Shown here piece after piece: positions 21,278-53,406 of a stretch of 64,000 nt of DNA (its first letter is position 1; each line of letters begins with the position of its first letter). The position numbers and the translations under genes are program-made. The stretch is from IMG/VR virus record IMGVR_UViG_3300036766_000988, positions 186,001 to 250,000 of that record. One strand, written 5' to 3'. The notes under the pieces were generated by a model that saw only the letters and a list, made by a program, of their open reading frames with translations, was not told the origin of the DNA and did no database searches.

Positions 21278-23584
21278 TCAGACGATGCTACAGGCCCCTC
21301 CGGCACACGCCACCTCGCTCTTGAGGTCGGTGTCGTCGGTGTCCTCCAACATCGTCGTGTAATCAACAGGCTGGTAGTCTTCGAGGATGGCGTTCCATCG
21401 AGCCTCGTCGACCGGGGTGACCACCGCTTCGTTGGGCGCGAAGGCGTAGTCTTTGTCTCCTGTGCTGGCGAGAAGCGAGACCCCTGTGAAGAACTCCCGG
21501 TTCTCCCAAAGGTAGTCCGCCACCTTGTCCCACTCTTCGGGCCGCACCGTCACGGTGTTGGAGACGTTGTGGCTGAGGCCTGGCGAGTACTGGCTGTCTG
21601 CGGTGCCTGCAAGCACCCAGTTCTCTTGTGTGGACTTCACCATATCGAGGAACGGGATGGCTGTGATGTCGTCCTTGATGGTTGCTCCCGGAGGAGCTTC
21701 GACCGGAAACTCGATCACGTACTTCCCATCCGGCTTGCGGACGCACATGTGGGGGTTGACCACCTTGAAGGCCTGGAAGACCTGCTCCAATTCATCCGCC
21801 GTCACACGACGGATGTACCGACGAGCATGGTGAGCGTGGTGTCCCGAGCCGACGCAGCCGAGTTCGAGAGACGTGGTCCCTGATGGCTTTACACAGGTGG
21901 TGCGAGCCGCAGGCTTGACCCCGATACGCGCTGCGTATTCGGCATTCCACTGCTTGATCAACCCAGCAACCTCTCGCTGGTACTCCGGGTTGCAGGCGAT
22001 GGCGGGAGCATCGAGCATCCCTGTCATACCGATCCCCAAGAGAGCCTCACGTTCGGCGATTGTCTCTGAGATCGCTCCGAGGTAGGGCATCTTCGTGTAC
22101 CCCGCTTGGAGCGTACCGATGATCGCTGCTGCCCTGGCTGCCTCTTTGAAGTCCTGTAGGGACGTCAGTTTGGCTGCGTTGATCTCACAGAGGTTGCAGA
22201 AGGCCCAACCCGTGTAAGTCTGACCGACCGCTGTCTCGACGCCTTTCGCCGCGAGTTTCGCCTGAGCTTCGGCGTCGATTTCGAGCTTGGGGTTCAAGCC
22301 AATCTCACAGCACGGGTTCGTGCCGTAGTCGTAGTCGTTCGTGAAGTAGAACCCAGGCTCTCCCCACTGACGAGTCATTCCGAAGATGCGCTTGAACTGC
22401 TTTTTCTTCACCTCGTCCCGTTTGAGGACGACGCTGTTGTTGGAGTTCGCCAGCCAGGGCTCTGTGGAATACCAGTTCCCTGTCTTGAGGTGCATCATCT
22501 CGCTGTCATCGAGCGAGAAGAGGCAGATCATGGCCGACCGACGAATGCCCCCCGAAAGGACGGCATCGGCTGCATGACAGAGGATTCGGTGGCACTCGAC
22601 CGGGCGGAGCTTACGCCCCATGGCGGCATTCAGAACGCCTCGGATGCGTTCCAAAGAGTCCTTGAGCTTGAGGTGCCCAGGAGCCCGCCCCCCCGACGTA
22701 CGGAGGGGCGTGCCTGCATCCCGGATTTGGTGGAAGGCGAACTCCAAGTTCACACCATCGAGAAAGCTCTGGACCAGCGCCTTGAGGGCGTCTGCCCACC
22801 CCTCGATGGTATCCTCGACGACGTGATGGCGAACCTTCTTCACGTCTACGTAGGAGATCGACGGAAGCTTCTCGATGTGGTCGAACTGAACCGAATACCC
22901 CACGCCGCAACCCGATAGGAGCAGGTAGAGAGCCTCCGAGAAGATTTCGGGACGATCGACGAGTGAAAACGAGCAGTTGTAGATGCGGTTGTTGTTGGCG
23001 AGAATGGCCTTGCCACCGAACTGCATGGATCGCATGGACGGTAGAACGCGCTTGTCTCGTACGAGATCGAAGGCCCAACGGATCTCCTCTTCCATCTCGG
23101 GATACACGTCGAGGTGCATCCCCTCGATGCGGGCGACGGTCTCGGCGAAGACCTCGCGACGCTTCTTGGCGGGTAGGTAGCGGGCGTACTTCCCCGCGTG
23201 GATGTAATCGGAGATGGCCTTGGGATCAGGCGACTTCGGAGTACGCGCTTGACGAGCCTCTGTCCGTTGATGCCGATATAGAATGAACGCCTTGGCAACC
23301 CCAAACTGGCTGTGTCGCATGAGGGCGGTCTCGACGGCATCCTGCACGTTCTCGACGCAGACGGTCTCTTCCGTCAGAGCGTCCATCACCGTGTTGATGA
23401 CCTTGTTCAGAGCCCGTTCATCGACGAGACCCTTCGACTCGATCCATGCCCGACTGAGGGCTCTACGGATCTTGGACACATCGAAGAGTTGAAGTGTCTG
23501 CCCATCCCGTTTACGAATGTGCTGTAGGGTTCTCACTACCGTGAGGTTCGGTTCGAGAGCACTCTGTACGCTAGGGGCCATCAT
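21278..23584 (-). CDS. nrdJ: class II (B12-dependent) ribonucleotide reductase with ATP-cone
   Basis: IRKRDG ATP-cone, YNCSF, TNPCCEI, CNL, KPSGT, C-terminal CAGGAC. Confidence 0.92.
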   Translation of the reverse strand: MMAPSVQSALEPNLTVVRTLQHIRKRDGQTLQLFDVSKIRRALSRAWIESKGLVDERALNKVINTVMDALTEETVCVENVQDAVETALMRHSQFGVAKAFILYRHQRTEARQARTPKSPDPKAISDYIHAGKYARYLPAKKRREVFAETVARIEGMHLDVYPEMEEEIRWAFDLVRDKRVLPSMRSMQFGGKAILANNNRIYNCSFSLVDRPEIFSEALYLLLSGCGVGYSVQFDHIEKLPSISYVDVKKVRHHVVEDTIEGWADALKALVQSFLDGVNLEFAFHQIRDAGTPLRTSGGRAPGHLKLKDSLERIRGVLNAAMGRKLRPVECHRILCHAADAVLSGGIRRSAMICLFSLDDSEMMHLKTGNWYSTEPWLANSNNSVVLKRDEVKKKQFKRIFGMTRQWGEPGFYFTNDYDYGTNPCCEIGLNPKLEIDAEAQAKLAAKGVETAVGQTYTGWAFCNLCEINAAKLTSLQDFKEAARAAAIIGTLQAGYTKMPYLGAISETIAEREALLGIGMTGMLDAPAIACNPEYQREVAGLIKQWNAEYAARIGVKPAARTTCVKPSGTTSLELGCVGSGHHAHHARRYIRRVTADELEQVFQAFKVVNPHMCVRKPDGKYVIEFPVEAPPGATIKDDITAIPFLDMVKSTQENWVLAGTADSQYSPGLSHNVSNTVTVRPEEWDKVADYLWENREFFTGVSLLASTGDKDYAFAPNEAVVTPVDEARWNAILEDYQPVDYTTMLEDTDDTDLKSEVACAGGACSIV

Positions 23585-25525: not shown

Positions 25526-25712
25526 TCTCGCCGCTTCCAAGCTGGGCCGAGCGGCGTAGGGGCTCCACTGGAACGAGCTGCATCACCAGATGAAAGTTCT
25601 GGCCGCAATTCGAACAGATGAAACGATGGGGCTCCTGTCCACTCGGCGAGAGTTGACTGCGGCACGTGCTACACCGCATGAGCGATTCAGGAGATGTCGA
25701 TTCTTCGGGCAT
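25506..25712 (-). CDS. small zinc-ribbon protein
   Basis: CSTC...CSNC. Confidence 0.6.
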   Translation of the reverse strand: MPEESTSPESLMRCSTCRSQLSPSGQEPHRFICSNCGQNFHLVMQLVPVEPLRRSAQLGSGENAERRS

Positions 25713-25924
25713 CAGAGGTCAAAAACGCCGCCAGTTGCGAGCCCCCAGGTTGTGTTGCACTTGGCGCACCGGTAGAGGTGCCGACCTTGCGAGTTCGGGG
25801 GGGTCATCTCGATTGCGAGAATGCTCTCACACCCAGGCCGCTTGCACTTGATGTGGACGGTCTTGGGCTCCTCGGGAACGGGAGCAGCAAGACCCGGCTT
25901 GGTTCCGGCAGGATCGATCGGCAT
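25712..25924 (-). CDS. small zinc-ribbon protein
   Basis: CKRPGC...YRCAKCNTTW; AGGAG RBS. Confidence 0.7.
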   Translation of the reverse strand: MPIDPAGTKPGLAAPVPEEPKTVHIKCKRPGCESILAIEMTPPNSQGRHLYRCAKCNTTWGLATGGVFDL

Positions 25925-25968
25925 CTACTTCTCCTAGGCTCAGCTTGCAGGGCGCTGAACTGTCCTCG

Positions 25969-26379
25969 TTACAGGTTCGATGTGGGGTACGAATCGGGGA
26001 ACAACGCACGCAGTTGCCCGTAGACGCGGGAGAAGAACACCGGATCCCACTGGTCGATCGTAGAAAGATCGGGGTTGATGAGCGGATTTCCCGTGTTGAC
26101 GAAGTGCGGGGGCGGGTATTGCCTCGGATCGAACGTCCCATCCTGGATGAAGGGTAGGATTTTCGCGAAATCCGTGGCCAGTACTAGACACACGAACCCC
26201 TTCGCCTTGAAACGGTAGTAGGCGACTTGCTTCGCGAAAACCCGTTCGGCCTGTACGATCTTGCGTTCGTAGCCGACGATCGCCGCCGCTACGTCGTGTA
26301 GGTCTTCTTGCCGAAGACGGGACAGACGTCGACCGTCAACGAATTGCAGCCGGGCGTCCACGATGAGGAGGCTCGACAA
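25969..26379 (-). CDS. hypothetical protein
   Basis: 136-aa ORF, start uncertain. Confidence 0.55.
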   Translation of the reverse strand: MSSLLIVDARLQFVDGRRLSRLRQEDLHDVAAAIVGYERKIVQAERVFAKQVAYYRFKAKGFVCLVLATDFAKILPFIQDGTFDPRQYPPPHFVNTGNPLINPDLSTIDQWDPVFFSRVYGQLRALFPDSYPTSNL

Positions 26380-26383
26380 GTAG

Positions 26384-26490
26384 AAAAAACTCAGCCCCTC
26401 AAATCGCCCGCCCCGCCCCTTCGGTCCAGCGCTGTTCAGACGCTTAGACCGTCAGTTGAACACAGGAATCGGGCGGTTTGAAGGGCCGAG
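26384..26490 (-). ncRNA. putative structured ncRNA (element 4) with long terminal stem and U6 tail
   Basis: 21-bp closing stem CUCGGCCCUUCAAACCGCCCG/CGGGCGAUUUGAGGGGCUGAG (G-U pairs on minus strand), internal hairpin, UUUUUU. Confidence 0.6.
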
Positions 26491-26496
26491 AAACTT

Positions 26497-26603
26497 TGGT
26501 GGACACGATCGGGGTTGAACCGACAACCAGGGCTTTGGAGGCCCCAGCTCTACCCGTCTTGACAAGCGGCGCCGCCGGTCAAGACCTTGAGTCTTACGTG
26601 CCC
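26497..26603 (-). tRNA. atypical tRNA, anticodon CCA (Trp), G3-U70/A73, 30-nt D-loop insertion
   Basis: Acceptor GGGCACG/CGUGUCC-A-CCA, anticodon arm GGGGC-CUCCAAA-GCCCU, T arm GUCGG-UUCAACC-CCGAU. Confidence 0.85.
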
Positions 26604-26615
26604 GTGAACTGAGAA

Positions 26616-26795
26616 GCTCGTTCGCTCCCGTGGAGGGGCTGGCTACTCTCCAGCGTGTCGCAGGCGTATACGTTCATGACGCGCATCGTGTCTGCGAGCA
26701 AGAGGGTTGATCTCACGGCCGTAAGACCAACACCCTGGCTTTCGGCAGGCCCTCGCGGGCTCACCATCAAGCTGCCCTCCCGGCAACGAACGAAC
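26616..26795 (-). ncRNA. putative multibranched ncRNA (element 2), 180 nt
   Basis: Closing stem GUUCGUUCGUU/AGCGAACGAGC, GGAGGG/CCCUCC, GCCC-GCGA-GGGC tetraloop hairpin, UGGUCUUAC/GUGAGAUCA, UCGCAG/CUGCGA. Confidence 0.65.
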
Positions 26796-26796
26796 T

Positions 26797-26894
26797 GAAC
26801 CACAAGCAGGCGTAGATATGACCCACGCACTTCCAGCCTACACGGCGACTCCCTGGCAAGGGGGCGGTCTCCTTGATCCTACTGCTTGTGGTTC
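26797..26894 (-). ncRNA. putative structured ncRNA (element 1), 98 nt
   Basis: Perfect 13-bp terminal stem GAACCACAAGCAG/CUGCUUGUGGUUC starting 9 nt after the promoter motif. Confidence 0.6.
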
Positions 26895-26903
26895 GTAGTT
26901 TTA

Positions 26904-26929
26904 CTACACCGCTCGACCCCCAAGTTCAA
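26904..26929 (-). promoter_or_regulatory. TTGAAC-N13-GGTGTAG promoter-like motif upstream of ncRNA cluster
   Basis: Exact motif and spacing. Confidence 0.7.
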
Positions 26930-27231
26930 CCTTGCTTCGATACCAAGACCGCTTTCTCGTATGAGGAGCCGATCTTCGCGTACAGCTCGGCCGGAGAGAA
27001 CCCTGGCTCAGGGACCTCCCCTCGATGGGACGCTTCGGCCTTTTGGTGGCAGGGGTCACAGAGCGAGATGCCGTTCTCGGCGACGTAGCCACCGTTGGGC
27101 ATCTCAGTCCGATCGGTGATGTGGTGAGCATCAAGCGGTTGAGGAGCTGAGCAAACGCGACAGGCGTTCCGGTCCCTCTTGAAGACGGCCTCCCTAAACG
27201 CCTGTCGCACCTGCTTCTTGGTGTCACCCAC
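26926..27231 (-). CDS. HNH endonuclease
   Basis: VFKRD..CRVC...DAHHI...NGISLCDPCH. Confidence 0.85.
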   Translation of the reverse strand: MGDTKKQVRQAFREAVFKRDRNACRVCSAPQPLDAHHITDRTEMPNGGYVAENGISLCDPCHQKAEASHRGEVPEPGFSPAELYAKIGSSYEKAVLVSKQG

Positions 27232-27886
27232 CTTCGATCCTGTTCCGAACGGGCTTTCGGTCCTTCCAGTGCTCGTCCGTTTGAACGTGATCTTCGCGAA
27301 CCCACTTGGCCACGTAGTGGGGGAACATGGAGTCGGGCATGTCGCACTGGCGTCGAACCACCACCCCTTCACGAGTTTCGCCAACGTGGCTTGCCCCGAG
27401 GGCATGCCGCTCGACGAGCTTCTGAAGCTCCTTGTCGCTGTAAACGATCACGTTCCGTTCCAGAACGGGTACCGTGGGACACCCCACCAGATCGGCCCAC
27501 TGCTCGACCTCGGCCCAGCTAGCCCACAGGCACTTTCGGAGGTCGCAGACCCCAAAGACCATGAAGTAGGCGGGCAGCCGGTTGTAGCTGATTGTGTGCT
27601 GAGCCCAGAGCCACTCGCCGAAGATCTGCACCCCAGCCGGGATGCGGCTCCTGATGCACGCGTGCATGGCCTTGAGAGCGCTGAAACTTTGGTGGCGGGG
27701 TCGGCCAGCATGGGTGCGGGCGAAGACCGCCTCGTTCTCCAGGCAGACGTTCGAGCCGTCCATCTTCTCGGTCACCATGATGGGGGAGAAGAGCAGGAAG
27801 TCCGTGGACTCGATTCGCTTGTCATCCTTCGTGCAGCCGGGGCTGAACAAGAAATGACCTGTTCGGGGGTACTTGGGGGAGTCCAT
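27224..27886 (-). CDS. ATP-dependent RNA ligase family protein
   Basis: KYPRT, TEKMDGSN (motif I), FGE, EGVVVR, KWVR. Confidence 0.85.
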   Translation of the reverse strand: MDSPKYPRTGHFLFSPGCTKDDKRIESTDFLLFSPIMVTEKMDGSNVCLENEAVFARTHAGRPRHQSFSALKAMHACIRSRIPAGVQIFGEWLWAQHTISYNRLPAYFMVFGVCDLRKCLWASWAEVEQWADLVGCPTVPVLERNVIVYSDKELQKLVERHALGASHVGETREGVVVRRQCDMPDSMFPHYVAKWVREDHVQTDEHWKDRKPVRNRIEGG

Positions 27887-27905
27887 GACATGCCTCGTGC
27901 GGCTA

Positions 27906-27931
27906 CTACGCCACGGGTCCCCCAAGTTCAG
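27906..27931 (-). promoter_or_regulatory. CTGAAC-N13-GGCGTAG promoter-like motif
   Basis: Intergenic, upstream of RNA ligase. Confidence 0.7.
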
Positions 27932-27934
27932 CCC

Positions 27935-29988
<2,054 letters not shown>

Positions 29989-30018
29989 CGCGGCATGATA
30001 GCCACGTCTGGTCTGATG

Positions 30019-30564
30019 TCAGCCGACTTTGGCTCCGTCGTCCCCAGAGCAGTATAGGAGAACCGTACCCGAGGGCCCCGACGTGGCGAGGATCATCCCT
30101 TCCGACTCGATGCCCATGATCTTGCGAGCTGCCAGGTTGAGAACCGCGACAACCTTCACGCCGATGAGAGCTTCGGGTGCGTAGGACTTCGCCAGCGTTG
30201 CGACGATTGGACGATTCCCCCCAGGCCCAAACGAGACCAACAGCTTCAGGAGCTTGTCGCTCTTCGGGATCCTCTCGGCTGTCTTGATGGTACCCACCCG
30301 CATGTCGACCTTGAGGAAGTCATCGAAGGAGATCTTTCCTCCCGAGAGAATCCTCGACATGGCTTCTGGAGACAGCCCTTGAGGATTGCTGACACCCTTC
30401 ATCTCCGCAGGCTTCGCTGCTCCCGAATCCGCCATCTCCTGCATGGTGGGCCGGTCGGGGCTCTCGAAAGCTTTCTTGTAGGCCTCCCGTGTCCCCTCGG
30501 TGATTTCCACCTTGAGACTCGAAATGGGGACTTCTGCGTGTAGGTCGATCTTGTGGTCAGTCAT
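30019..30564 (-). CDS. tRNA-binding OB-fold protein (Trbp111/CsaA/MetRS C-terminal type)
   Basis: ISFDDFLKVDMRVGTI...SDKLLKL...NLAARKIMGIESEGMILA. Confidence 0.88.
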   Translation of the reverse strand: MTDHKIDLHAEVPISSLKVEITEGTREAYKKAFESPDRPTMQEMADSGAAKPAEMKGVSNPQGLSPEAMSRILSGGKISFDDFLKVDMRVGTIKTAERIPKSDKLLKLLVSFGPGGNRPIVATLAKSYAPEALIGVKVVAVLNLAARKIMGIESEGMILATSGPSGTVLLYCSGDDGAKVG

Positions 30565-30923
30565 GGTGCCTTCTTGTCGATGAGCGCGAGATGCGCGTCA
30601 ATGTCTTGTTGCTCGAATTCCGCAGCAAAGCCCAGCGAATGACAGCACCAACATCCGGTGCCCCAATGGCCGTTGCATGCGGGGTTGCAGCAGCCGAGTC
30701 CGTGCTGCTCCGCGATCTTACAACGTCGTTCACCAGCCTGATGAGGCCGCTGTTTACTGAGGATGCTCTCGTAGAAGCGAATGCGCTTCTGGAGTTCTTC
30801 GACGTACGGATTGCACTTGGGGCACGGAGTGCAGTAGGCGGGCCATTGGGCTTGGCGTTCCGAGTCGAGAGCGCGATGCCACCCGGCCGGATAGGGATGC
30901 CGATGCTCACAGGTGGGGATCAT
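30561..30923 (-). CDS. hypothetical Cys-rich protein
   Basis: ATGA overlaps at both ends. Confidence 0.55.
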   Translation of the reverse strand: MIPTCEHRHPYPAGWHRALDSERQAQWPAYCTPCPKCNPYVEELQKRIRFYESILSKQRPHQAGERRCKIAEQHGLGCCNPACNGHWGTGCWCCHSLGFAAEFEQQDIDAHLALIDKKAP

Positions 30924-31330
30924 GGTTGGGACTCCTCAGCCTCAGCAACGATTTGAGGAAGGATTGGTGCGTAGAAGTTTCTGAATGCCGATTGGGCCAG
31001 AAAGTCCTCGACGCTCTTCCAAGCTACGGGACATCCTTCCTCCATCTCACGTGGCCCTCCTACAGCTTCCACCAGGAAGAGGCACACGATAGACGCCCGT
31101 CCTGGCTTGTGGGGAAGGCCGTGCGGCCCTTCGTGGACAAGCCGAGCACTTACCGTGAGTACTCCCGTCTCTTCCCCCAGCTCACGCCGCTGAGCAGCTT
31201 CGGGGGTCTCTCCGTCTTCGACCATACCGCCAGGCAAAGCCCAACTTTGGTAGCGGGGATTCCACACGCACAGTACATCGCCATCGCTGACGACCACCGA
31301 CACGGCTGCTTTTCGTTCTTCGCTAGGCAT
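30920..31330 (-). CDS. NUDIX hydrolase
   Basis: Nudix box GGMVEDGETPEAAQRRELGEETG. Confidence 0.9.
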   Translation of the reverse strand: MPSEERKAAVSVVVSDGDVLCVWNPRYQSWALPGGMVEDGETPEAAQRRELGEETGVLTVSARLVHEGPHGLPHKPGRASIVCLFLVEAVGGPREMEEGCPVAWKSVEDFLAQSAFRNFYAPILPQIVAEAEESQP

Positions 31331-31349
31331 GCTTCACCCTTGCTGATGC

Positions 31350-31769
31350 CTAGCGGGGCTCCGGTACCAACACGAAGCCCAATGAGGTACCATCGTCCCG
31401 ATAGATCTCAATATCACGTGAAGGCCCTTCTCCTGGTACCTGAAAGGAGTCCCGATAGGAGATCCGGAAGGTGGCGTTGGCTTTGGCGTTACAGGCTTCA
31501 TCGGAGACAACCGTCGAGATTTTAGCCTCGGTGGGGAAGGGGATCTCCGTTGCAAGCAACTCCAGATCGTTCGAATAGTTGGTATCGACGACCCTAACCG
31601 GTAGGGGGTTATCTTCACCTTCGGGCTGAACGAGCCCATCAGCTCCGGCACCATCCCGATGCCGGAGCGTATACAAGGTCAAGGTTCCTGGATTGTGCGC
31701 AAAGCTAAACCAGAACCCGTCGCCTGTCAGATCGATCAGCATGACATTTCTCGGGGAAGACGTGCCCAC
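31350..31769 (-). CDS. hypothetical protein
   Basis: 139-aa ORF. Confidence 0.5.
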   Translation of the reverse strand: MGTSSPRNVMLIDLTGDGFWFSFAHNPGTLTLYTLRHRDGAGADGLVQPEGEDNPLPVRVVDTNYSNDLELLATEIPFPTEAKISTVVSDEACNAKANATFRISYRDSFQVPGEGPSRDIEIYRDDGTSLGFVLVPEPR

Positions 31770-31847
31770 CTCTGATGATGAGCAATACCCCAGACGGCGG
31801 ACTTCGATACATCGAACATGTAAAAAATAGCCCGCCCTCTTCTGGGA

Positions 31848-33251
31848 TCAGTCTGCCCCCTTGATGTTGGCCACGGGGTACAACCGGTGGGCGACCCTAG
31901 CGATCTCCTCGGCTTCCAGAACCCCCAAGACCGAGTCGAGATCTTTGTAAACGTGAGCGCATTCGTCGAGCGGGATGTGGCGGTGGTTGCTCATGATGCC
32001 TTCGATGGCCACGCCGTTGAACGTACGCTTGACGTTGGCCATCTCGTCATCGATCCGCTGCTGCTTGTGTTCGAGGTCCCGCTTGGCCTTGCCCCGCGCC
32101 ATGATGCGGCCGGATCCGTGGTTGACCGAGCACGCCGTCCTGTAGGCATTCCGCTGCGGAAACAGGACTGCGGCACCCTCGTACATCGAACCGGGGATGA
32201 GGCAAGGGTGGCCGGTGGCCTCCCACGGGGTTCCCACCAGATCGGGATGTCCCGCCGGAAACGCGCGAGTGGCCCCCTTGCGGTGAACGAAGCCCTTCTT
32301 GGTCGTCCCATCGGGAAGGACGAGCGTCTCCTGCTGGACCAGGTTGTGGCTGATCTCGTAGTAGACCTGGACGTCCGATCCGAAGACTTCTTGCGTGGCC
32401 TCTCGAACTCCGTTGACGATGATGTGTCGGTTCGCGACAGCGAAGTTCGCAGCCGAGTTGTGGTGAGCCCAGTACTCCTTGCCGAGGGGCTCGTCCGCAC
32501 GGAGCCACGACTCCTCGCGCCGGTTGGCCGGGAGGTTGCGGACCTTCGCGCCTTCGTAGAAGAAGTGGTTGGCCGTCTGCCAGCCGTATCCGCGCGAGCC
32601 GCAGTGAACCATGATGAAGACCTCGCCCGAGTCGCGGTCGCACTGCATCTCGACGAAGTGGTTACCGCCGCCGACACTGCCGAGCTGGCCGATGACGCTG
32701 CCGTACGCCTTCTCGATCTTCGTGAGATCGGCGGTCTCGTCGACCGGGATGTACTGCCGCTCGCAGAGCCCAGCATCGACCCCGAGGGCCTTCGCTCCGT
32801 AGCGGAGGATCTCGTCGACCTGTTGCTTCTTGAACTTGGGCATCAGCTCCGGCCGGTTGTGTCCCTTGCCGGTTGCGATACGACGCTCGACCTCGGTGAC
32901 CCACTGGCGCCGACGTTCCTTGCTCTTCACGGAACCCGCGTTGAGGTTCGCCTTCATGTAGAGCACGCCGCACGAGATGTCGTAGCCCGAGCCGCCCTGG
33001 ATGATCGTGTTGTCCGTCACGATGACCGAGCCAACCGGAACGCCGTAGCCGACGTGGCAGTCCGGCATCAGGTACGCCCCGATCACCCCTTCGTAGGAAG
33101 CGCCGTCCGCGATCTGCTGCCAACAGCCTTCTTCGGAGGACTCGTAGAGAGCTTCCGAAAGGAAAGCGTGGGCATCTACCCGCATCTTGCCAACCTTCGG
33201 CAGGACGTAGTGGTTGTCGCGGACCTTCTGAACGGCGTACTTGAACGACAT
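31848..33251 (-). CDS. rtcB: RtcB RNA ligase
   Basis: MPDCH.GYG.PVG, GYDISCG, GGGNHFVE, HCGSRG, SHN, HRKGAT, PGSM, HGSGR. Confidence 0.95.
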   Translation of the reverse strand: MSFKYAVQKVRDNHYVLPKVGKMRVDAHAFLSEALYESSEEGCWQQIADGASYEGVIGAYLMPDCHVGYGVPVGSVIVTDNTIIQGGSGYDISCGVLYMKANLNAGSVKSKERRRQWVTEVERRIATGKGHNRPELMPKFKKQQVDEILRYGAKALGVDAGLCERQYIPVDETADLTKIEKAYGSVIGQLGSVGGGNHFVEMQCDRDSGEVFIMVHCGSRGYGWQTANHFFYEGAKVRNLPANRREESWLRADEPLGKEYWAHHNSAANFAVANRHIIVNGVREATQEVFGSDVQVYYEISHNLVQQETLVLPDGTTKKGFVHRKGATRAFPAGHPDLVGTPWEATGHPCLIPGSMYEGAAVLFPQRNAYRTACSVNHGSGRIMARGKAKRDLEHKQQRIDDEMANVKRTFNGVAIEGIMSNHRHIPLDECAHVYKDLDSVLGVLEAEEIARVAHRLYPVANIKGAD

Positions 33252-33259
33252 GGGATCTA

Positions 33260-33285
33260 CTACACCAACCGGGGCTCTTGTTCAG
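33260..33285 (-). promoter_or_regulatory. CTGAAC-N13-GGTGTAG promoter-like motif, 8 nt before rtcB ATG
   Basis: Exact motif; no SD between motif and ATG. Confidence 0.7.
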
Positions 33286-33863
33286 CCAGGCTCTTGGGGG
33301 GGATCGGGTCGACGAAGGAGACCTCGGCTGAACTCGATCATCTGATGAACCACCGCTTCGAGGTTCCGCCGCTGGATTTCCTCGCGGAATTTGTCCTCTT
33401 CGGTGGCTCCCTCACGGCTCGCCCGTTCTTGGGCTTGTTCGTAGGCGATGTCAGCTCGACCGCATCGTTGCAACAGGGCCTCCATCACCCCAAAGTGCAT
33501 GAGGCGCTCTTCCATGCCCTTGCGCTTGAGCGCCATGGCGGTCCAGAACTCTTCGGCCGCATCGTCTGCCGTGACCCCTTCGCCAAGCGTGACCTTTCCG
33601 TTCGGATCGATCTGGACGATGACCCGGCCGGTTTGGGTGGCGAACGTGAGGGTACCCGGATGGGGGGCTCCCAGCTCACGGATGAGCCGGTTCTCGACCG
33701 ACTCGGGCCTTGGCCCCAGAACGGCATCCCAGTAGCCTCTCAGCCCCTCCTGGTCCTCCCCGGCCCCGGCGTTGGGGGCTTCGGAGTGGTCTTTTTCAGT
33801 GGAGGCCTCTTGAGGGGCTTCTCCTGGGGTGCCTTCTGAACGGTCTTTTTGATCGTTGGGCAT
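33282..33863 (-). CDS. hypothetical protein
   Basis: 193 aa, AAGGAGG RBS. Confidence 0.7.
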   Translation of the reverse strand: MPNDQKDRSEGTPGEAPQEASTEKDHSEAPNAGAGEDQEGLRGYWDAVLGPRPESVENRLIRELGAPHPGTLTFATQTGRVIVQIDPNGKVTLGEGVTADDAAEEFWTAMALKRKGMEERLMHFGVMEALLQRCGRADIAYEQAQERASREGATEEDKFREEIQRRNLEAVVHQMIEFSRGLLRRPDPPQEPG

Positions 33864-34378
33864 GGCGTGCCCTCCTTCTCATCTGGGTCGTCGCGTAGGA
33901 TACGTTCCCACGCGGTCAGGATTTGGGTTCGGTCGACTTTCGGCTCCTCGACCTTGGGCTCGCGCCGACGTGTTCTACGGGTGCGGACGGGTTCTTCGCG
34001 ATACGGACCCTGGGGGGTTCCTCCAACGAAGGCCTGTCGGAGGGCCTCAGCGTTGAAGGCTCCTGTTTCGAAGCCCCCTACGGAGAGATTCTGGTGAACT
34101 TCCAGGCGTTCCGCTTCAAGCTGGAGTTCGCTGGTGGCTCGCTGCATCTCCGCGTTGGCTTGCCGGATCTCTTCCTGCGTTCGTTCGGCTCGTCCTTGTC
34201 TGGCCCTAAACTCCCTGACCCTTCGTTCGACGAGCCAGCGGAAGGCGTACTTCCACGCCTGCGCCGACCACACGATCAGAAGAAAGCCAACCGCTATCCC
34301 GAAAGCGTAGCGACCCGAGGGGCTCAACCAGCTCCACAAACCGGTGAACCAACCGGTGACATCTCCGACCGTGACCAT
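33740..34378 (-). CDS. hypothetical membrane protein
   Basis: N-terminal hydrophobic helix; GGTGTAG 8 nt upstream. Confidence 0.65.
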   Translation of the reverse strand: MVTVGDVTGWFTGLWSWLSPSGRYAFGIAVGFLLIVWSAQAWKYAFRWLVERRVREFRARQGRAERTQEEIRQANAEMQRATSELQLEAERLEVHQNLSVGGFETGAFNAEALRQAFVGGTPQGPYREEPVRTRRTRRREPKVEEPKVDRTQILTAWERILRDDPDEKEGTPCPTIKKTVQKAPQEKPLKRPPLKKTTPKPPTPGPGRTRRG

Positions 34379-34646
34379 GGCCTACCCTACACCTCCTGAG
34401 CTTTCGAGGGCTGAAGAAAAAACGCAACAACCGACCCCTCTCAGGCCCATTACCAGTAGGGGGTTCGACACACCTCCCTTCGACGCTGCGAAGTATTTTC
34501 GACTGCCGCGAAGGATTTTGGCGCTTCCTCCACATAGGAGCGCTCGAAGTTGTCCCGAGAGCCTACGACCTGTCCCGTAAAGAACGGGGTTGTCGTCTTT
34601 CTTCGCTCCGACGTGAACGAAGTGGATCACAGGGGAGCATAACCCG

Positions 34647-35033
34647 ATGGAGGATCAGATGAGAGCGTTCTACGTGAAGATCGATGAGGCTACCCAGGCG
34701 AAGACTCCAGCAGAGGCTATCGGGAAGTTGACGGAGGCCTACTCGCTCGGGCAGCCGCTCATCAAGCGGGCCCGAGCCCGGTGCGAGTTCAGGACGGTGG
34801 CGAATCTCTCGGATATCCTCCGGTGGGCCGCCTTCACTTGCGCAGCGAAGCTTGTCGGTGGCGACCGAGCCCCTTGGGCCCTTTTTCCTTACGATGGCAG
34901 CTCCTCGCCGACGCTCAGGGGAGAGTCGTCAAGCCTCGACTGGCGGTGGCGTAAGGAGCAGGAGTGGGCCGAGACGTGGCTTCCGAGTGTCCCCCTCTGG
35001 ACCCGAGGCCCTGACTCGAAGATGAGCTTATAG
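34647..35033 (+). CDS. hypothetical protein
   Basis: 128-aa ORF. Confidence 0.6.
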   Translation: MEDQMRAFYVKIDEATQAKTPAEAIGKLTEAYSLGQPLIKRARARCEFRTVANLSDILRWAAFTCAAKLVGGDRAPWALFPYDGSSSPTLRGESSSLDWRWRKEQEWAETWLPSVPLWTRGPDSKMSL

Positions 35034-35045
35034 GCCTGGAAAGCT

Positions 35046-35414
35046 ATGGAGAGTCTCACCCAGCGGGTTGTGCGTCGATTCCTGGCAGCTCAACCTCGGT
35101 TCCAAGACGTCCGCCAGATGCTGCTCGAAGGGCTCAAGCGGGAGGGGTGGGAAGTTCGCGAGGGCCTCATGGTGCCGCACGCGACCTCGCCGGATCACAA
35201 GACCCGCCTGTGGTTCAAGGCCCGTGCGGTCTACATGAATGACCTGGGCACGGATCCCCGTGACTATAAGAACACCCACAGCTTGTCATCCGACATCCGT
35301 GAGTACGTCGATCTCCGAGGGCTCTTGAACGACATCGCTATCATGCGGCGAATCCAACATGGATCCAAGCCGGACCCCGCAGGAAACCCGGGATCACCCG
35401 AATTTCGCGCCTAG
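35046..35414 (+). CDS. hypothetical protein
   Basis: 122-aa ORF. Confidence 0.65.
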   Translation: MESLTQRVVRRFLAAQPRFQDVRQMLLEGLKREGWEVREGLMVPHATSPDHKTRLWFKARAVYMNDLGTDPRDYKNTHSLSSDIREYVDLRGLLNDIAIMRRIQHGSKPDPAGNPGSPEFRA

Positions 35415-36313
35415 GTCTCGTCTTCTTCGTCCGCCTCTTCGCCGTTCTCGGCCTCTTCGGCTTCCCTTGCGGCCTTGGCGATCTCCGCCACACGGTCTGC
35501 GAACCCTTCGTGGAGATCCCAATTGATGTCTTGGGAACCCTTCCCAGGCGGGGGTCTCCAGGCTCGCCGAAGTCCATATAGCACTTGGTTGACGTGAGCG
35601 ACGTCTCCGATCTCGCGGAAGATGTTGAGCGCGGTTTCCGGTGTGATCGTTCCGTCGGTCATCCCTTGCATCAGAAGGGTGCGGTAGAAACTGAAGCTTG
35701 GTCCTGCCTCACCTGGTATGAAGATCGACGAGAAAAACGACGTCCGCTCTTGGAAGTGGTTCTCAGTTTTGAAACAGTCTCGCAGTTCCTTGGCTGGGTT
35801 CTCTACAAGATACTGCACGAGGGCTGCGGCATCCTGGTGAGCCTTTCGTCGAGACGACTCTCCCCAGAAAGGCTCGAACTTGAGCCCCAGGAGGTAGTCC
35901 CACACGTCTTCACGAATGAGCACCTGACCCACCGGTTCGAACTTTCGGTAGCCCTTTCGTTGAACCCAGCCCCGTTCGATGGGCTCGAAGAACTTCTCGT
36001 AGTCGTAGACGACCGGCAGAGGAGCTTCCGGTTTCTCGAACCGATCGTCTCGCCAGGTCATCGGACTATCCCCAAGCAGATCCTTGGTCACGTCCCAGTG
36101 GATGGGCTGCGGTTCGAAATTGAGCGTGCCTCGGTCATCGTTGTACGTCCCCCGGAACGGCAAGCAGAGCGGACTCCACAGCCCTACCGGGTAGCAGAAG
36201 CCGCTTCGTCCATCGTCGATGCTCGTGCCTGGTCTGAGCAGGAAGAGCAAGGCCTTCGTTCCTGGTGGGAGAGGAAGGCCGGAGAGCCCACAGGTTTCGT
36301 ACCAACATCCCAT
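35411..36313 (-). CDS. hypothetical protein
   Basis: 300-aa ORF, MGCWYETC start. Confidence 0.7.
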   Translation of the reverse strand: MGCWYETCGLSGLPLPPGTKALLFLLRPGTSIDDGRSGFCYPVGLWSPLCLPFRGTYNDDRGTLNFEPQPIHWDVTKDLLGDSPMTWRDDRFEKPEAPLPVVYDYEKFFEPIERGWVQRKGYRKFEPVGQVLIREDVWDYLLGLKFEPFWGESSRRKAHQDAAALVQYLVENPAKELRDCFKTENHFQERTSFFSSIFIPGEAGPSFSFYRTLLMQGMTDGTITPETALNIFREIGDVAHVNQVLYGLRRAWRPPPGKGSQDINWDLHEGFADRVAEIAKAAREAEEAENGEEADEEDET

Positions 36314-36381
36314 AGTCCAGCTCGTGTTTCAGTTCGATGCGTTGGGCGTTCGTTGGTGTAAGGCGGGTCGAGGGTCATTCG

Positions 36382-36798
36382 ATGGCAGACGACAAGCGCA
36401 AGCACGAGGGAGTCATCTACCAGGTGGGGGAGCCCGAGCGGGTCGGGAGATATCCGGTTCGCACCGAGCTAACGGTGTTGCCCGCCGCCGATGATCCGAA
36501 GGTCGGCTGGACCGTCGGGCATGTGTACTCGGGAGAAGAGGTCTTCAAAGCAGGGGCTCCCGATGTCTCCTTGACGCGGAGAGAGGATCTTCAAGAAGGC
36601 ATGGAGATCATCGTGGCTACCCTCGTCGGGGGCTATCGCATGATCGTCAAGAGAGATGACGACGGAGAACTCTACGCTGAAACTGCGAACGGGTTGACGG
36701 GGGCGTTCCTCGACTTCGATACGGATGATCGGCACTGCTGGACTTCTGCGATGGCGTACAACCGGCGTGCCCTCAAGAGCTTGGAGACGTCGGGCTAG
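36382..36798 (+). CDS. hypothetical protein
   Basis: GAGG RBS; GGTGTAA upstream. Confidence 0.6.
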   Translation: MADDKRKHEGVIYQVGEPERVGRYPVRTELTVLPAADDPKVGWTVGHVYSGEEVFKAGAPDVSLTRREDLQEGMEIIVATLVGGYRMIVKRDDDGELYAETANGLTGAFLDFDTDDRHCWTSAMAYNRRALKSLETSG

Positions 36799-53296: not shown

Positions 53297-53406
53297 GCGA
53301 TCTGGTTCAAACAGCTATCGCCACCGTGGCAGCCCTGGTTGTGGGCTCCTTGCTCTTCTGGTTGTGGAGGCGGAACTACGAGCGACGTCAGAAGGACTCT
53401 CAGTGA
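53293..53406 (+). CDS. small membrane protein
   Basis: 37 aa single TM; overlaps at both ends. Confidence 0.5.
   Translation: MSDLVQTAIATVAALVVGSLLFWLWRRNYERRQKDSQ

What the first reader, a model, noticed from the sequence alone, without database searches (positions are those of the whole stretch)
26497..26603. tRNA with Trp anticodon, alanine acceptor identity and a 30-nt hairpin in the D-loop
Seen (minus strand): GGGCACG UA AGACUC AAG [GUCUUGAC CGGCGGCGCCGCUU GUCAAGAC] GGGUA GAGC U GGGGC CUCCAAA GCCCU GGUU GUCGG UUCAACC CCGAU CGUGUCC A CCA. Removing the bracketed hairpin (26556-26585) leaves a near-normal D-loop. The acceptor has G1-C72, G2-C71, G3-U70 and A73. Established: G3-U70 with A73 specifies AlaRS charging regardless of anticodon, while bacterial tRNA-Trp uses G73. 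Inference: an Ala-charged UGG reader (targeted mistranslation), a decoy for anticodon nucleases or synthetases, or a precursor whose insert is excised and sealed by the nearby RtcB or RNA ligase. The insert is not a bulge-helix-bulge, and an alternative AAGAC/GUCUU hairpin can form.
Basis: partly seen in the sequence, partly recalled or inferred. Interest (0 to 1): 0.92.

Follow-up and report, generated by a model that had tools for sequence, protein, structure and literature searches.

The report
Odd tRNA-like gene in huge phage
A 252-kb uncultivated phage carries one real tRNA-derived gene that reads the tryptophan codon but has the acceptor end of an alanine tRNA and a 30-base hairpin inside its D-loop; I found no relative of it and have no expression data, so whether it works, and how, is open.

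Summary
Window 26603..26497 (minus strand) is a cloverleaf with a 7-bp acceptor stem, anticodon loop CUCCAAA, T-loop UUCAACC, A73 and an encoded CCA. A self-contained 30-nt hairpin (26556-26585) interrupts it at D-loop position 16/17. ARAGORN and Rfam miss it intact. Deleting that one hairpin, out of 498 in the window, gives a default tRNA-Trp(CCA) call; shuffled controls give none. A second assembly has the identical sequence.

The acceptor end (G1-C72, G2-C71, G3·U70, C4-G69, A73) matches the tRNA-Ala and tmRNA genes of related phages. It does not fit bacterial tRNA-Trp.

The gene lies at the end of an RNA ligase-HNH gene pair. A 322-nt highly structured spacer precedes it and a strong terminator follows. 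Relatives lack it at this site. Scans of viral, metagenome and genome collections found no copy with the insert. They did find five bacterial tRNA(CCA) genes with the same Ala-type acceptor end.

Best reading (0.4): an expressed tRNA mimic that AlaRS would charge and that decodes poorly. Main rival (0.3): a decaying pseudogene. Splicing of the insert is unlikely. Efficient Trp-to-Ala recoding is disfavoured because the phage uses Trp at a normal 1.3%. The element is a new structural variant; its function is untested.

The parts
26497..26603 (-). tRNA-like gene, 107 nt. G1 = 26603, A73 = 26500, encoded CCA = 26499..26497.
   Evidence: Sequence read. ARAGORN calls tRNA-Trp(CCA) after the insert is removed. 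Hairpin-deletion control. Cloverleaf retained in the MFE fold.
26597..26603 (-). Acceptor 5' strand GGGCACG. It pairs with 26501-26507 (CGUGUCC): G1-C72, G2-C71, G3·U70, C4-G69, A5-U68, C6-G67, G7-C66.
   Evidence: The top four pairs and A73 are the same as in the relatives' tRNA-Ala(ggc/cgc) and tmRNA.
26586..26596 (-). UAAGACUCAAG: U8, A9, an extra A, the D-stem 5' strand G(A)CUC, then A14 A15 G16.
   Evidence: Read. Registers evaluated. ARAGORN drawing.
26556..26585 (-). 30-nt near-palindromic hairpin inserted at D-loop position 16/17: an 8-bp stem GUCUUGAC/GUCAAGAC, a C/U mismatch, a 4-bp stem and a GCGC loop. It folds at -16.9 kcal/mol on its own.
   Evidence: The pattern occurs once in the window and once in the whole 252-kb contig. 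The direct repeat UCAAG at 26586-26590 and 26558-26562 is read from the sequence.
26546..26555 (-). GGGUAGAGCU: G18 G19, (G/U)20, A21, the D-stem 3' strand GAGC, U26.
26529..26545 (-). Anticodon arm GGGGC-CUCCAAA-GCCCU. Anticodon CCA at 26536-26538.
26508..26524 (-). T arm GUCGG-UUCAACC-CCGAU, preceded by the 4-nt variable loop GGUU (26525-26528).
26384..26490 (-). Long hairpin followed by U6, an intrinsic-terminator-like structure. It starts 7 nt after the CCA end and stops just before the start codon of orf136.
   Evidence: Fold at -59.8 kcal/mol, z = -5.8, 0 of 200 shuffles as good. The simple terminator scan missed it because its loop and stem limits are exceeded.
26604..26925 (-). 322-nt spacer between the HNH gene and the tRNA-like gene. 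It is very highly structured and includes a perfect 13-bp long-range helix (26797-26809 / 26882-26894).
   Evidence: -144.4 kcal/mol, z = -4.4, 0 of 100 shuffles as good. Inverted repeat I13. No Rfam family at E <= 10 over 26200-26900, which covers all but the first 25 nt of the spacer. The ORF inside it (26594-26830) has a weak codon score of 0.05 against a gene mean of 0.47, and no family match.
26926..27234 (-). Small HNH endonuclease, about 102 aa. Its GTG start overlaps the stop codon of the RNA ligase gene.
   Evidence: Pfam PF01844, E = 3.6e-6. PHROG HNH families, plus phrog_24030 (annotated 'RNA ligase'), whose first 64 profile positions align to the HNH region of this protein. Start inferred from the sequence.
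27224..27925 (-). RNA ligase, nucleotidyltransferase domain only.
   Evidence: PF09414, E = 1.3e-27. Homologs are common in the related phages.
27935..29596 (-). GroEL-type chaperonin, used as the anchor for finding relatives.
   Evidence: PF00118..
25969..26379 (-). orf136, a conserved hypothetical gene that lies downstream of GroEL (or of GroEL and the RNA ligase) in all relatives examined. It marks the downstream edge of the extra segment.
   Evidence: tblastn 38-75% identity in L002-L013. Gene tables.
30019..33251 (-). RNA-handling neighbours: a tRNA-binding-domain protein (30019-30564), NUDIX (30920-31330) and RtcB (31848-33251).
   Evidence: PF01588, PF00293 and PF01139.

Best explanation
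This is a genuine tRNA-derived gene of the phage. I read it as a tRNA mimic rather than a routine decoder.

Shown:
- It is a cloverleaf with a Trp anticodon loop.
- It has an alanine-type acceptor end with an encoded CCA.
- It carries a stable hairpin at D-loop position 16/17.
- It lies between a structured spacer at the 3' end of the RNA ligase-HNH gene pair and a terminator-like hairpin with a U6 tract.

Inferred:
- It is transcribed with that operon.
- RNase P cuts it at G1, and it ends at or near its encoded CCA, giving a stable RNA of about 107 nt that keeps the hairpin.
- Nucleotides 16/17 face the solvent at the tRNA elbow, so the hairpin can stick out while G18/G19 still dock on the T-loop.
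- Host AlaRS ignores the anticodon and reads G3·U70, A73 and G2-C71, so it would charge the RNA with alanine. Bacterial TrpRS, which wants G73, A1-U72 and G3-C70, would charge it poorly.
- The bulky, irregular D-arm makes it a poor substrate for EF-Tu and the ribosome.
- Its likeliest use is therefore as a tRNA look-alike. It could be bait or a competitor for host enzymes that recognise the tRNA-Trp anticodon loop or the tRNA shape, such as defence nucleases. It could instead be a tRNA-shaped 3' module that defines and stabilises the end of the structured upstream RNA.
For: - Real and non-random. A second assembly is identical.
These are U8, A14, R15-Y48, G18, G19, A21, Y11-R24, G10-C25, U33, A37, G53-C61, U54-A58, U55, C56 and R57.
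- All 17 stem pairs outside the D-arm are intact.
- The departures from a normal tRNA-Trp are not scattered. They sit in the D-arm and at the acceptor identity positions.
- The acceptor end equals the relatives' tRNA-Ala and tmRNA pattern GGGC.../...GUCC-A. G3·U70 is found only in tRNA-Ala among the 60 tRNAs parsed from the fetched loci.
- Identity rules: PMC9976931.
- The hairpin is self-contained and stable, and the canonical D-stem register is isoenergetic with the extended-helix register (-42.6 against -42.7 kcal/mol).
- Expression context: same strand as the RNA ligase and HNH genes, with a strong hairpin + U6 directly downstream.
- A tRNA-handling neighbourhood: RNA ligase, tRNA-binding protein, NUDIX, RtcB.
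- The phage uses Trp normally (1.32%), which argues against an efficient Ala-inserting decoder and so for a non-decoding role.
- Precedents: a pseudo-tRNA that acts as a tRNA-like element within a larger RNA (B. cereus tRNAOther, PMC3399842), and phage tRNAs that neutralise tRNA-targeting defences (PMC10264068, PMC11464382, PMC11555353).
- tRNAs of this phage clade often carry structural expansions.
Against: - There are no expression, processing or charging data.
- It is a singleton. There is no homolog with the insert in IMG/VR, the metagenome collection or GTDB genomes under the patterns used. Covariation could therefore not be tested, and selection cannot be told from recent origin.
- The perfect anticodon loop is equally compatible with a working decoder.
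- No specific host enzyme is known for it to decoy.
- The review of non-canonical tRNAs that I searched by keyword (PMC7609411; 12 of 31 matching passages shown) mentions no natural functional tRNA with a hairpin in the D-loop, so the tolerance of the fold is assumed.
- About 186 kb of the contig lie outside the window and were not examined for other tRNAs or for aminoacyl-tRNA synthetases.
Confidence: 0.4

Rival explanations
1. It is a decaying tRNA pseudogene. A former phage tRNA was hit by a replication-slippage or template-switch palindrome in the D-loop, by two extra bases in the D-arm, and by changes at the acceptor end. It has no function and has simply not been deleted yet.
For: - It is a singleton with no homolog anywhere I searched.
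- It is missed by ARAGORN and falls below the Rfam threshold.
- The D-stem is irregular even without the insert.
- Anticodon and acceptor identity disagree.
- Relatives carry 6-23 tRNAs plus a tmRNA next to GroEL, whereas this phage has none in 64 kb. That is consistent with loss of a tRNA array.
- The insert is flanked by the direct repeat UCAAG, and its arms are the reverse complement of the local D-loop sequence. That is what a template-switch mutation produces (read).
- Two of the five bacterial tRNA(CCA) genes with the same acceptor end also have degenerate D-arms and fall below the Rfam threshold.
Against: - Everything outside the D-arm is intact: 17 of 17 stem pairs, the conserved loop and tertiary positions I checked, and the encoded CCA.
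- The acceptor-end differences form a coherent alanine set identical to that of the relatives' tRNA-Ala and tmRNA, not random damage.
- The insert sits at one of the few solvent-exposed positions of a tRNA and is a closed stable helix.
- The gene is at a different place from the relatives' tRNA arrays and came with an extra HNH gene and a structured spacer.
Confidence: 0.3
2. It is a working UGG decoder that keeps the hairpin. One version: it is charged with Trp, by a phage-encoded or unusual TrpRS that accepts A73/G1-C72 or weakly by the host enzyme, and serves as a nuclease-resistant spare tRNA-Trp. The other version: it is charged with Ala and causes Trp-to-Ala mistranslation.
For: - A canonical anticodon stem-loop, T arm, elbow nucleotides and CCA end.
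- A73 + G1-C72 + G2-C71 + CCA is the archaeal/eukaryal Trp identity set, and G3·U70 + A73 + G2-C71 is the bacterial Ala set (PMC9976931).
- Natural mistranslating tRNAs exist (tRNAProA, PMC10404621; allo-tRNAs that insert Ala, PMC5389517).
- Phage tRNAs rescue translation from defence nucleases.
- Three bona fide bacterial tRNA(CCA) genes (Rfam 39-65 bits) share the GGG.../...UCC-A-CCA acceptor end.
Against: - Ala insertion at UGG would damage the phage's own proteins, which contain 1.32% Trp.
- A bacterial TrpRS needs G73, A1-U72 and G3-C70, and no TrpRS gene was seen among the window ORFs scanned.
- A hairpin of about 12 bp at the elbow has no precedent among decoding tRNAs in the review I searched.
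- The D-stem has a bulge and an extra linker base.
Confidence: 0.15
3. It is a precursor. The 30-nt hairpin is an intervening sequence that a nuclease cuts out, and the halves are rejoined by the adjacent RNA ligase or by RtcB to give a 77-nt tRNA.
For: - Removing exactly 26556-26585 restores a tRNA that ARAGORN calls.
- An RNA ligase and an HNH nuclease gene lie immediately upstream, and RtcB lies 5 kb away.
- Archaeal tRNAs do carry introns at D-loop positions (PMC4090602, PMC3241643).
Against: - There is no bulge-helix-bulge. There is a 3-nt bulge on one side only, and the 8-bp helix has no second bulge.
- No splicing-endonuclease domain was found among the ORFs scanned.
- HNH enzymes are typically DNases.
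- The RNA ligase is conserved in relatives that have neither the HNH gene nor this element.
- Rfam gave no group I or group II intron match over 26200-26900 at E <= 10.
- The 77-nt product would still have an irregular D-arm and mismatched identity.
Confidence: 0.05
4. It is an attachment-site fragment or a chance look-alike, that is, not a gene at all.
For: Phage attP sites often contain the 3' part of a host tRNA. Rfam aligns only the 3' 60 nt.
Against: - Both acceptor strands are present and pair 7 of 7.
- No integrase was found among the window ORFs scanned.
- The locus is inside the replication/RNA-repair module of a 252-kb phage.
- Chance is excluded by the shuffle controls.
Confidence: 0.02

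Closest known systems
tRNA genes of huge (jumbo) phages, including those of this phage's own clade
   Same: It is phage-borne, has an encoded CCA and lies near GroEL. The relatives' tRNAs also deviate from the standard cloverleaf (8-bp acceptor stem, extra variable-arm hairpins).
   Different: Relatives have arrays of 6-23 tRNAs plus a tmRNA upstream of GroEL, and all of these are detectable by ARAGORN. This gene is alone, lies downstream of GroEL, is invisible to ARAGORN, has an insert in the D-loop, and has an acceptor end that contradicts its anticodon.
Natural identity-mismatched (mistranslating) tRNAs: bacterial tRNAProA (PMC10404621) and allo-tRNAs (PMC5389517)
   Same: The anticodon of one amino acid is combined with the identity elements of another. 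AlaRS identity is carried by G3·U70 independently of the anticodon.
   Different: Those families have many members, a dedicated synthetase (tRNAProA) or an 8/4 or 9/3 acceptor branch (allo-tRNA), and measured mistranslation. Here there is one sequence, a 7/5 branch, a D-loop hairpin and no functional data.
Archaeal tRNAs with introns at non-canonical positions (PMC4090602, PMC3241643)
   Same: An intervening segment inside the D-loop whose removal restores a standard tRNA, with RtcB-type ligase genes nearby.
   Different: Archaeal introns are defined by a bulge-helix-bulge (or a relaxed form) cut by EndA. Neither is present here. The relatives carry tmRNA genes, so the host is taken to be bacterial (inference).
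Pseudo-tRNA tRNAOther of Bacillus cereus (PMC3399842)
   Same: A tRNA-like element that does not serve translation and is reported to be part of a larger RNA. Here too a long structured RNA (322 nt) directly precedes the tRNA-like part.
   Different: tRNAOther is chromosomal, flanks a genomic island and has experimental support. No sequence relationship was tested or is claimed.
tRNA-like domain of tmRNA
   Same: G1-C72, G2-C71, G3·U70, C4-G69, A73 and CCA. Six of the seven acceptor pairs are identical to the tmRNAs of relatives L004 and L006, and the seventh differs on both sides.
   Different: tmRNA has no anticodon arm, and it has a tag reading frame and pseudoknots. ARAGORN, Rfam and an nhmmer profile of the relatives' tmRNAs find nothing in the window.
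Phage tRNAs that counter tRNA-targeting defences (PMC10264068, PMC11464382, PMC11555353)
   Same: A single phage tRNA-type gene next to RNA-repair genes. This is a plausible link to host nucleases that cut tRNAs.
   Different: Those tRNAs are canonical in shape and escape through anticodon-loop changes. This one has a standard Trp anticodon loop and an altered body.

Membership tests
Canonical elongator tRNA (Rfam RF00005 / ARAGORN) | Scores above the family threshold as a contiguous cloverleaf | tested here: not met
   ARAGORN default finds 0 genes in the window. RF00005 gives 24 bits against a gathering score of 29, for the 3' 60 nt only.
Canonical elongator tRNA (Rfam RF00005 / ARAGORN) | 7-bp acceptor stem, 5-bp anticodon stem with a 7-nt loop (U33, purine 37), 5-bp T stem with a UUCRANY loop, G18 G19, U8, A14 | tested here: met
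   Read from the sequence. ARAGORN calls tRNA-Trp(cca) once 26556-26585 is removed.
Canonical elongator tRNA (Rfam RF00005 / ARAGORN) | D-arm with a 3-4-bp stem, two linker nucleotides and a loop of 7-11 nt | tested here: not met
   Three linker nucleotides, a bulged A in the stem and a 30-nt hairpin in the loop. The passages of the review that I read give the D-stem as 3-7 bp and the D-loop as 4-11 nt (PMC7609411).
Bacterial tRNA-Trp (TrpRS substrate) | Anticodon C34 C35 A36 | tested here: met
   CUCCAAA loop, anticodon at 26538..26536.
Bacterial tRNA-Trp (TrpRS substrate) | G73, A1-U72, G3-C70 (PMC9976931, Table 1) | tested here: not met
   The element has A73, G1-C72 and G3·U70 (rules).
Archaeal/eukaryal-type tRNA-Trp | A73, G1-C72, G2-C71 and the CCA anticodon (PMC9976931) | tested here: met
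   All four are present. Whether a matching TrpRS exists in the phage or its host was not testable.
tRNA-Ala identity (AlaRS substrate) | G3·U70 with A73 and G2-C71 | tested here: met
   rules. The same end occurs in the relatives' tRNA-Ala (3 of 3) and tmRNA (5 of 5) and in none of the 57 other tRNAs.
tRNA-Ala identity (AlaRS substrate) | Minor elements G4-C69 and G20 | tested here: inconclusive
   The 4:69 pair is C-G, as in two of the three tRNA-Ala genes of relative L008. Position 20 is G or U depending on how GGGUA is numbered.
tRNA-Ala identity (AlaRS substrate) | Actual aminoacylation with alanine | not testable with these tools
   Needs an in vitro or in vivo charging assay.
tRNA-Ala (decoder of GCN) | Anticodon NGC | tested here: not met
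   The anticodon is CCA.
Intron-containing tRNA, archaeal type | Bulge-helix-bulge at the exon-intron junctions, with a splicing endonuclease | tested here: not met
   One 3-nt bulge only, and an uninterrupted 8-bp helix. No tRNA_int_endo domain among the ORFs scanned.
Intron-containing tRNA, group I type | A self-splicing intron of about 200 nt or more, usually in the anticodon loop | tested here: not met
   The insert is 30 nt and lies in the D-loop. No RF00028 hit at E <= 10.
tmRNA | tRNA-Ala-like domain plus a tag reading frame and pseudoknots, with no anticodon arm | tested here: not met
   The acceptor end is tmRNA-like, but an anticodon arm is present. ARAGORN, Rfam and nhmmer find no tmRNA.
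Bacterial Y RNA / YrlA | Match to the Rfam Y-RNA/YrlA covariance models (from memory, these RNAs have a Ro-binding stem formed by the 5'/3' ends, a permuted tRNA-like module and an adjacent rsr gene; I did not test those features one by one) | tested here: not met
   The element has normal tRNA topology, with its ends in the acceptor stem. No Rfam match in the window at E <= 10.
Repeated palindromic element / MITE | Multiple copies in the genome | tested here: not met
   One copy in the window and one in the whole 252-kb contig. The three other IMG/VR hits are unrelated.

The most novel reading that the evidence does not exclude
There may be a natural, recurrent class of tRNAs that combine the Trp anticodon CCA with a full alanine acceptor identity (G1-C72, G2-C71, G3·U70, A73, CCA). 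This phage gene would be a D-arm-remodelled member. The five bacterial genes found here would be other members. Three are canonical and two have degenerate D-arms. Three of the five lie next to IS elements, a type I restriction-modification methylase or Csm6. Such RNAs would be alanylated and would either recode UGG to Ala under particular conditions or serve as Ala-charged tRNA mimics in phage-host conflict.
Probability: 0.12. Interest if true: 0.85.

Novelty: new variant of a known kind. Interest (0 to 1): 0.55.

Why it matters
Suppose the RNA is made and charged. It would then be the first natural tRNA-type RNA known to me with a helical expansion inside the D-loop. It would also be a natural case in which AlaRS identity is grafted onto a Trp anticodon in a virus. 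That bears on three questions:
- how much the tRNA elbow can be remodelled;
- whether phages use mis-identity tRNAs or tRNA mimics against host tRNA-directed defences;
- how many tRNA-derived genes standard finders miss because of inserts.

The hairpin-deletion scan used here is a cheap way to look for more such genes. If the element is a pseudogene, it is only a curiosity of tRNA-array decay in huge phages.

Tried and rejected
**Homolog search**
- The syntenic sites of 11 related loci found through GroEL (60-80% identity; L002-L004, L006-L013), plus L099 found through the RNA ligase, contain nothing tRNA-like. L006 ends 300 nt after GroEL, so its site is only partly covered.
- Loci holding RNA-ligase homologs (L095-L099) contain nothing similar.
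- The exact 49-nt 3' half, and the pattern CTCCAAA-N5-GGTT-N5-TTCAACC, found only the source contig in IMG/VR.
- The relaxed pattern with A73-CCA gave two chance hits in the metagenome collection.
- The acceptor/anticodon pattern in IMG/VR, with two gap ranges, gave only self and one chance sequence present in three contigs.
- blastn and megablast against GenBank phages gave no match.
- A ClpP-based attempt to reach the rest of the contig returned only unrelated phages. That scan was wasted.

**Origin of the hairpin**
- Repeated-element origin: rejected.

**Other identities considered**
- tmRNA remnant: the acceptor end is similar, but there is no sequence or model match.
- A homolog of the conserved RNA motif that occupies the same spacer in relatives: nhmmer finds that motif in L006, L008, L011 and L099 but not in the window.
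- Closest tRNA among the relatives: only a weak resemblance, in the T arm, to L006 tRNA-Ile(gat). No clear parent was found.
- Trp-codon avoidance by the phage, which would have supported host-directed mistranslation: not seen.
- Protein-coding explanation for the spacer (ORF 26594-26830): no family hit and a weak codon score, but the score is not decisive for short ORFs.
- The sigma-70 promoter scan found nothing. Phage promoters are probably of another type.
Full report
**1. What is there**

It is a 107-nt cloverleaf with these parts:
- a 7-bp acceptor stem GGGCACG/CGUGUCC, which includes G3·U70;
- discriminator A73 and an encoded CCA;
- an anticodon arm GGGGC-CUCCAAA-GCCCU with anticodon CCA;
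- a 4-nt variable loop GGUU;
- a T arm GUCGG-UUCAACC-CCGAU.

The D region is UAAGACUCAAG - [30-nt hairpin, 26556-26585] - GGGUAGAGCU.

The anomalies are confined to three features: one extra A after A9, a bulged A in the D-stem, and the hairpin between positions 16 and 17/18.

**2. Is it more than chance?**

Standard finders fail on the intact sequence. ARAGORN finds no tRNA in the 64 kb. Rfam's tRNA model reaches 24 bits, against a gathering score of 29, for the 3' 60 nt only. Removing 26556-26585 in silico gives a default ARAGORN call of a 77-nt tRNA-Trp(CCA).

As a control I deleted each of the 498 perfect hairpins of at least 6 bp in the window in turn. Only this deletion creates a tRNA call across the junction. 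None of 2,128 hairpins in five Markov-shuffled windows does. The same procedure on 1.57 Mb of other fetched loci gives only a trivial hit.

The 107 nt fold to -48 kcal/mol (z = -2.6) with the acceptor, anticodon and T arms and the hairpin all in place. The hairpin alone is worth -16.9 kcal/mol. The canonical D-stem register (G18/G19 free) and an extended-helix register (ACUC/GGGU stacked under the hairpin) are isoenergetic, at -42.6 and -42.7 kcal/mol. The alternative AAGAC/GUCUU pairing costs about 6 kcal/mol.

A Logan assembly of run SRR11714510 is 100% identical to window 25673-37886. The sequence is therefore reproducible between assemblers. This is the same genotype and gives no evolutionary information.

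**3. Where it sits**

The window is part of IMGVR_UViG_3300036766_000988, a 252-kb viral contig. From the locus coordinates, the window corresponds to roughly contig positions 186,000-250,000.

Read along the minus strand, the gene order is:
- RtcB (33251..31848), NUDIX, a tRNA-binding-domain protein and orf126;
- GroEL (29596..27935);
- RNA ligase PF09414 (27925..27224);
- a small HNH gene whose GTG start overlaps the ligase stop codon (27234..26926);
- a 322-nt spacer;
- the tRNA-like gene;
- a long hairpin followed by U6;
- orf136 and orf68;
- two clamp-loader genes, ribonucleotide reductase, NAD-dependent DNA ligase and RecD2.

The spacer folds at -144 kcal/mol, z = -4.4. The downstream hairpin folds at -59.8 kcal/mol, z = -5.8. 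So the element is bracketed by unusually structured RNA and by a terminator-like signal. It most plausibly forms the 3' end of the ligase-HNH transcript (inference).

**4. Relatives**

GroEL homologs at 60-80% identity identify a clade of large uncultivated phages: L002-L004 in IMG/VR and L006-L013 in metagenome and Logan assemblies. L099 was reached through its RNA ligase.
- These phages carry arrays of 6-23 tRNA genes and a tmRNA upstream of GroEL. This phage has none at the corresponding place.
- orf136 is conserved in all of them and follows GroEL, or GroEL plus the RNA ligase.
- L099 has the order GroEL - orf126-like - RNA ligase - 217 nt - orf130. L011 keeps a remnant of the ligase C-terminus.
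- None has the HNH gene, the 322-nt spacer or anything tRNA-like at this site.
- Instead, four of them (L006, L008, L011, L099) share a conserved RNA motif of about 110 nt with a covarying GNRA hairpin and no Rfam match. The window lacks that motif.

So HNH + spacer + tRNA-like is a lineage-specific replacement.

Direct searches for the element gave only the source contig or chance matches. I tried the exact 3' half, degenerate anticodon/T-loop patterns, and acceptor + anticodon patterns with variable gaps. The hairpin is not a repeated element: there is one copy in the window and one in the whole contig. With no homologs, covariation cannot be tested.

**5. Identity elements**

Published identity sets (PMC9976931):

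| tRNA | Identity elements |
|---|---|
| Bacterial Trp | G73, A1-U72, G2-C71, G3-C70, G4-C69, G5-C68, A9, C34 C35 A36 |
| Archaeal Trp | A73, G1-C72, G2-C71, C34 C35 (A36 as listed in the review's Table 1) |
| Bacterial Ala | A73, G2-C71, G3·U70, G4-C69, G20 |

The element has A73, G1-C72, G2-C71, G3·U70, C4-G69 and the CCA anticodon.
- It fails the bacterial Trp acceptor set.
- It meets the main Ala set.
- It also meets the archaeal-type Trp set.

In the relatives, G3·U70 occurs in all three tRNA-Ala genes and in all five tmRNAs, each with A73. It occurs in none of the other 57 tRNAs. Two tRNA-Ala genes and the tmRNAs of L004 and L006 share GGGC.../...GUCC-A with the element. The acceptor end is therefore a coherent alanine signature of this phage clade and not random wobble. 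Charging itself is untested.

**6. A lead outside phages**

I scanned one genome per species of GTDB (185,579 species). The pattern required TCC-ACCA at the 3' end, a GTTC T-loop, CTCCAAA, and a GGG 28-58 nt upstream. It gave 25 stretches, where I had roughly estimated about 17 chance matches. Five are real tRNA(CCA) genes with G1-C72, G2-C71, G3·U70, A73 and an encoded CCA.

| Locus | Source | Rfam tRNA score | Neighbouring genes |
|---|---|---|---|
| L110 | Acidimicrobiales MAG | 65.3 bits | type I R-M methylase, IS1595 transposase |
| L128 | uncultured bacterium | 50.2 bits | Csm6, DUF5677 |
| L123 | Sedimentisphaerales MAG | 38.9 bits | ARMT1-like phosphatase |
| L115 | Latescibacterota MAG | below threshold (reduced D-arm) | tRNA-Gly 12 nt upstream |
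| L126 | Pseudomonadales MAG | below threshold (reduced D-arm) | IS transposase |

(Scores; contexts.)

I could not check whether these genomes also have a canonical tRNA-Trp. I also could not rule out that they are hybrid genes created by island integration. I report them as a lead that the combination recurs, not as a family.

**7. Weighing the readings**

- *Efficient Trp-to-Ala recoding* would hit the phage itself. Thirty-two window ORFs (11,364 aa) contain 1.32% Trp, with Trp-rich proteins among them.
- *Splicing of the insert* lacks a bulge-helix-bulge and an endonuclease. It also lacks any specific link to the ligase, which relatives keep without the element.
- *A pure pseudogene* fits the singleton status, the irregular D-arm and the apparent loss of the tRNA array. 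The UCAAG direct repeats, and the fact that the hairpin arms are the reverse complement of local D-loop sequence, look like a template-switch mutation.
- Against pure decay, everything outside the D-arm is intact, and the identity positions changed coherently. The insert sits at one of the few solvent-exposed positions of a tRNA (established structural knowledge of positions 16/17). It forms a closed, stable helix.

I therefore favour (0.4) an expressed tRNA mimic that AlaRS would charge and that decodes poorly. It would act as bait or competitor for tRNA-directed host enzymes, or as a tRNA-shaped 3' module of the structured upstream RNA. Precedents are PMC3399842 for a pseudo-tRNA within a larger RNA, and PMC10264068, PMC11464382 and PMC11555353 for phage tRNAs in defence conflicts. 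The other readings follow: a pseudogene (0.3), a working decoder (0.15), a spliced precursor (0.05), and an att fragment or chance look-alike (0.02).

**8. Comparison with known kinds, and novelty**

It works most like a phage tRNA or pseudo-tRNA. It is not a member of the canonical tRNA family as that family is operationally defined: it fails the Rfam and ARAGORN thresholds and the D-arm rules. It is also not a member of bacterial tRNA-Trp, tRNA-Ala decoders, tmRNA, intron-bearing tRNAs of either type, or Y RNAs (see the membership rows).

A keyword search of the review of non-canonical natural tRNAs found no mention of a D-loop hairpin (PMC7609411). I rate the element a new variant of a known kind.

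Interest is moderate (0.55). The anatomy is striking and now solidly verified. But it is a single sequence with no evidence of expression, charging or selection.

**9. Limits**

- About 186 kb of the contig were not examined.
- The pattern scans need exact matches at the specified bases and would miss diverged copies.
- The host is unknown.
- All functional statements are inferences.

Noticed in passing
L006:8555-8659, L008:11739-11858, L011:6336-6443, L099:6700-6813 (the window has no copy): A conserved structured RNA motif of about 110 nt lies downstream of GroEL (or of the RNA ligase) and upstream of a terminator and the orf136 homolog in four related phages. Its invariant blocks are GGUCGGGU, AGCGGNGGYGG and a hairpin with loop GUSACAAK, plus a GNRA hairpin whose stem covaries. 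There is no Rfam match at E <= 10. It could be a riboswitch-like leader or a small RNA. In the window phage its place is taken by the HNH gene, the 322-nt spacer and the tRNA-like gene.
   Followed up: partly
L110:2534-2608, L123:1283-1358, L128:7383-7457, L115:7899-7966, L126:3018-3090: Five bacterial (MAG) tRNA(CCA) genes have G1-C72, G2-C71, G3·U70, A73 and an encoded CCA, that is, an alanine-type acceptor end on a Trp anticodon. Three are canonical (Rfam 39-65 bits) and two have reduced D-arms. The neighbours of three of them include a type I R-M methylase with an IS1595 transposase, an IS transposase, and Csm6.
   Followed up: partly
window 26604-26925 (-): The 322-nt spacer is exceptionally structured (-144 kcal/mol, z = -4.4), with a perfect 13-bp long-range helix and two GNRA-capped hairpins. 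It has no Rfam family, and blastn (word size 9, E <= 1) against the related loci fetched by then found no match in it. A 57-78-aa ORF called inside it has a weak codon score.
   Followed up: partly
window 26926-27925 (-): The RNA ligase (PF09414, nucleotidyltransferase domain only) and a ~102-aa HNH gene overlap by GTGGGTGA (the ligase stop inside the HNH start). PHROG phrog_24030, annotated 'RNA ligase', matches this protein's HNH region with its first 64 profile positions, which suggests that HNH-ligase fusions exist elsewhere. The ORF listing over-extends the HNH ORF to 159 aa.
   Followed up: partly
L011:6106-6155: A 50-nt remnant (84% identical to window 27312..27263) of the RNA-ligase C-terminus lies in the spacer after GroEL of a relative that has lost the ligase gene.
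   Followed up: yes
window 1-64000 compared with L002-L013: The window phage has no detectable tRNA or tmRNA in 64 kb. Its relatives have 6-23 tRNAs and a tmRNA within 10 kb upstream of GroEL. At that place the window has a tRNA-binding-domain protein, NUDIX and RtcB instead.
   Followed up: partly
L002:7389-7470, L002:1693-1776, L008:3837-3908: The relatives' tRNAs are often non-standard. Examples are a tRNA-Trp with an 8-bp acceptor stem and a 10-nt variable region, a tRNA-Ile with a variable-arm hairpin, and one tRNA with a 2-base 'anticodon' call.
   Followed up: no
L008:15544-19941, compared with window 21278-23584: The ATP-cone ribonucleotide reductase of relatives L008-L010 is 1465 aa and carries an intein with a LAGLIDADG domain. 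The window's copy is 768 aa without one.
   Followed up: no
L006:4707-6251, L099:1431-2948: A VWA-domain protein of about 500 aa sits just upstream of orf126 and GroEL in relatives. Its size and the presence of a VWA domain recall Ro60/Rsr (from memory), which would be of interest next to the unknown RNA motif. This was not tested.
   Followed up: no
window 45869-47011, 52457-53296, 53364-54335 (+): A radical SAM protein, a DUF1848 protein and an ADP-ribosylglycohydrolase are encoded on the plus-strand arm of the window.
   Followed up: no
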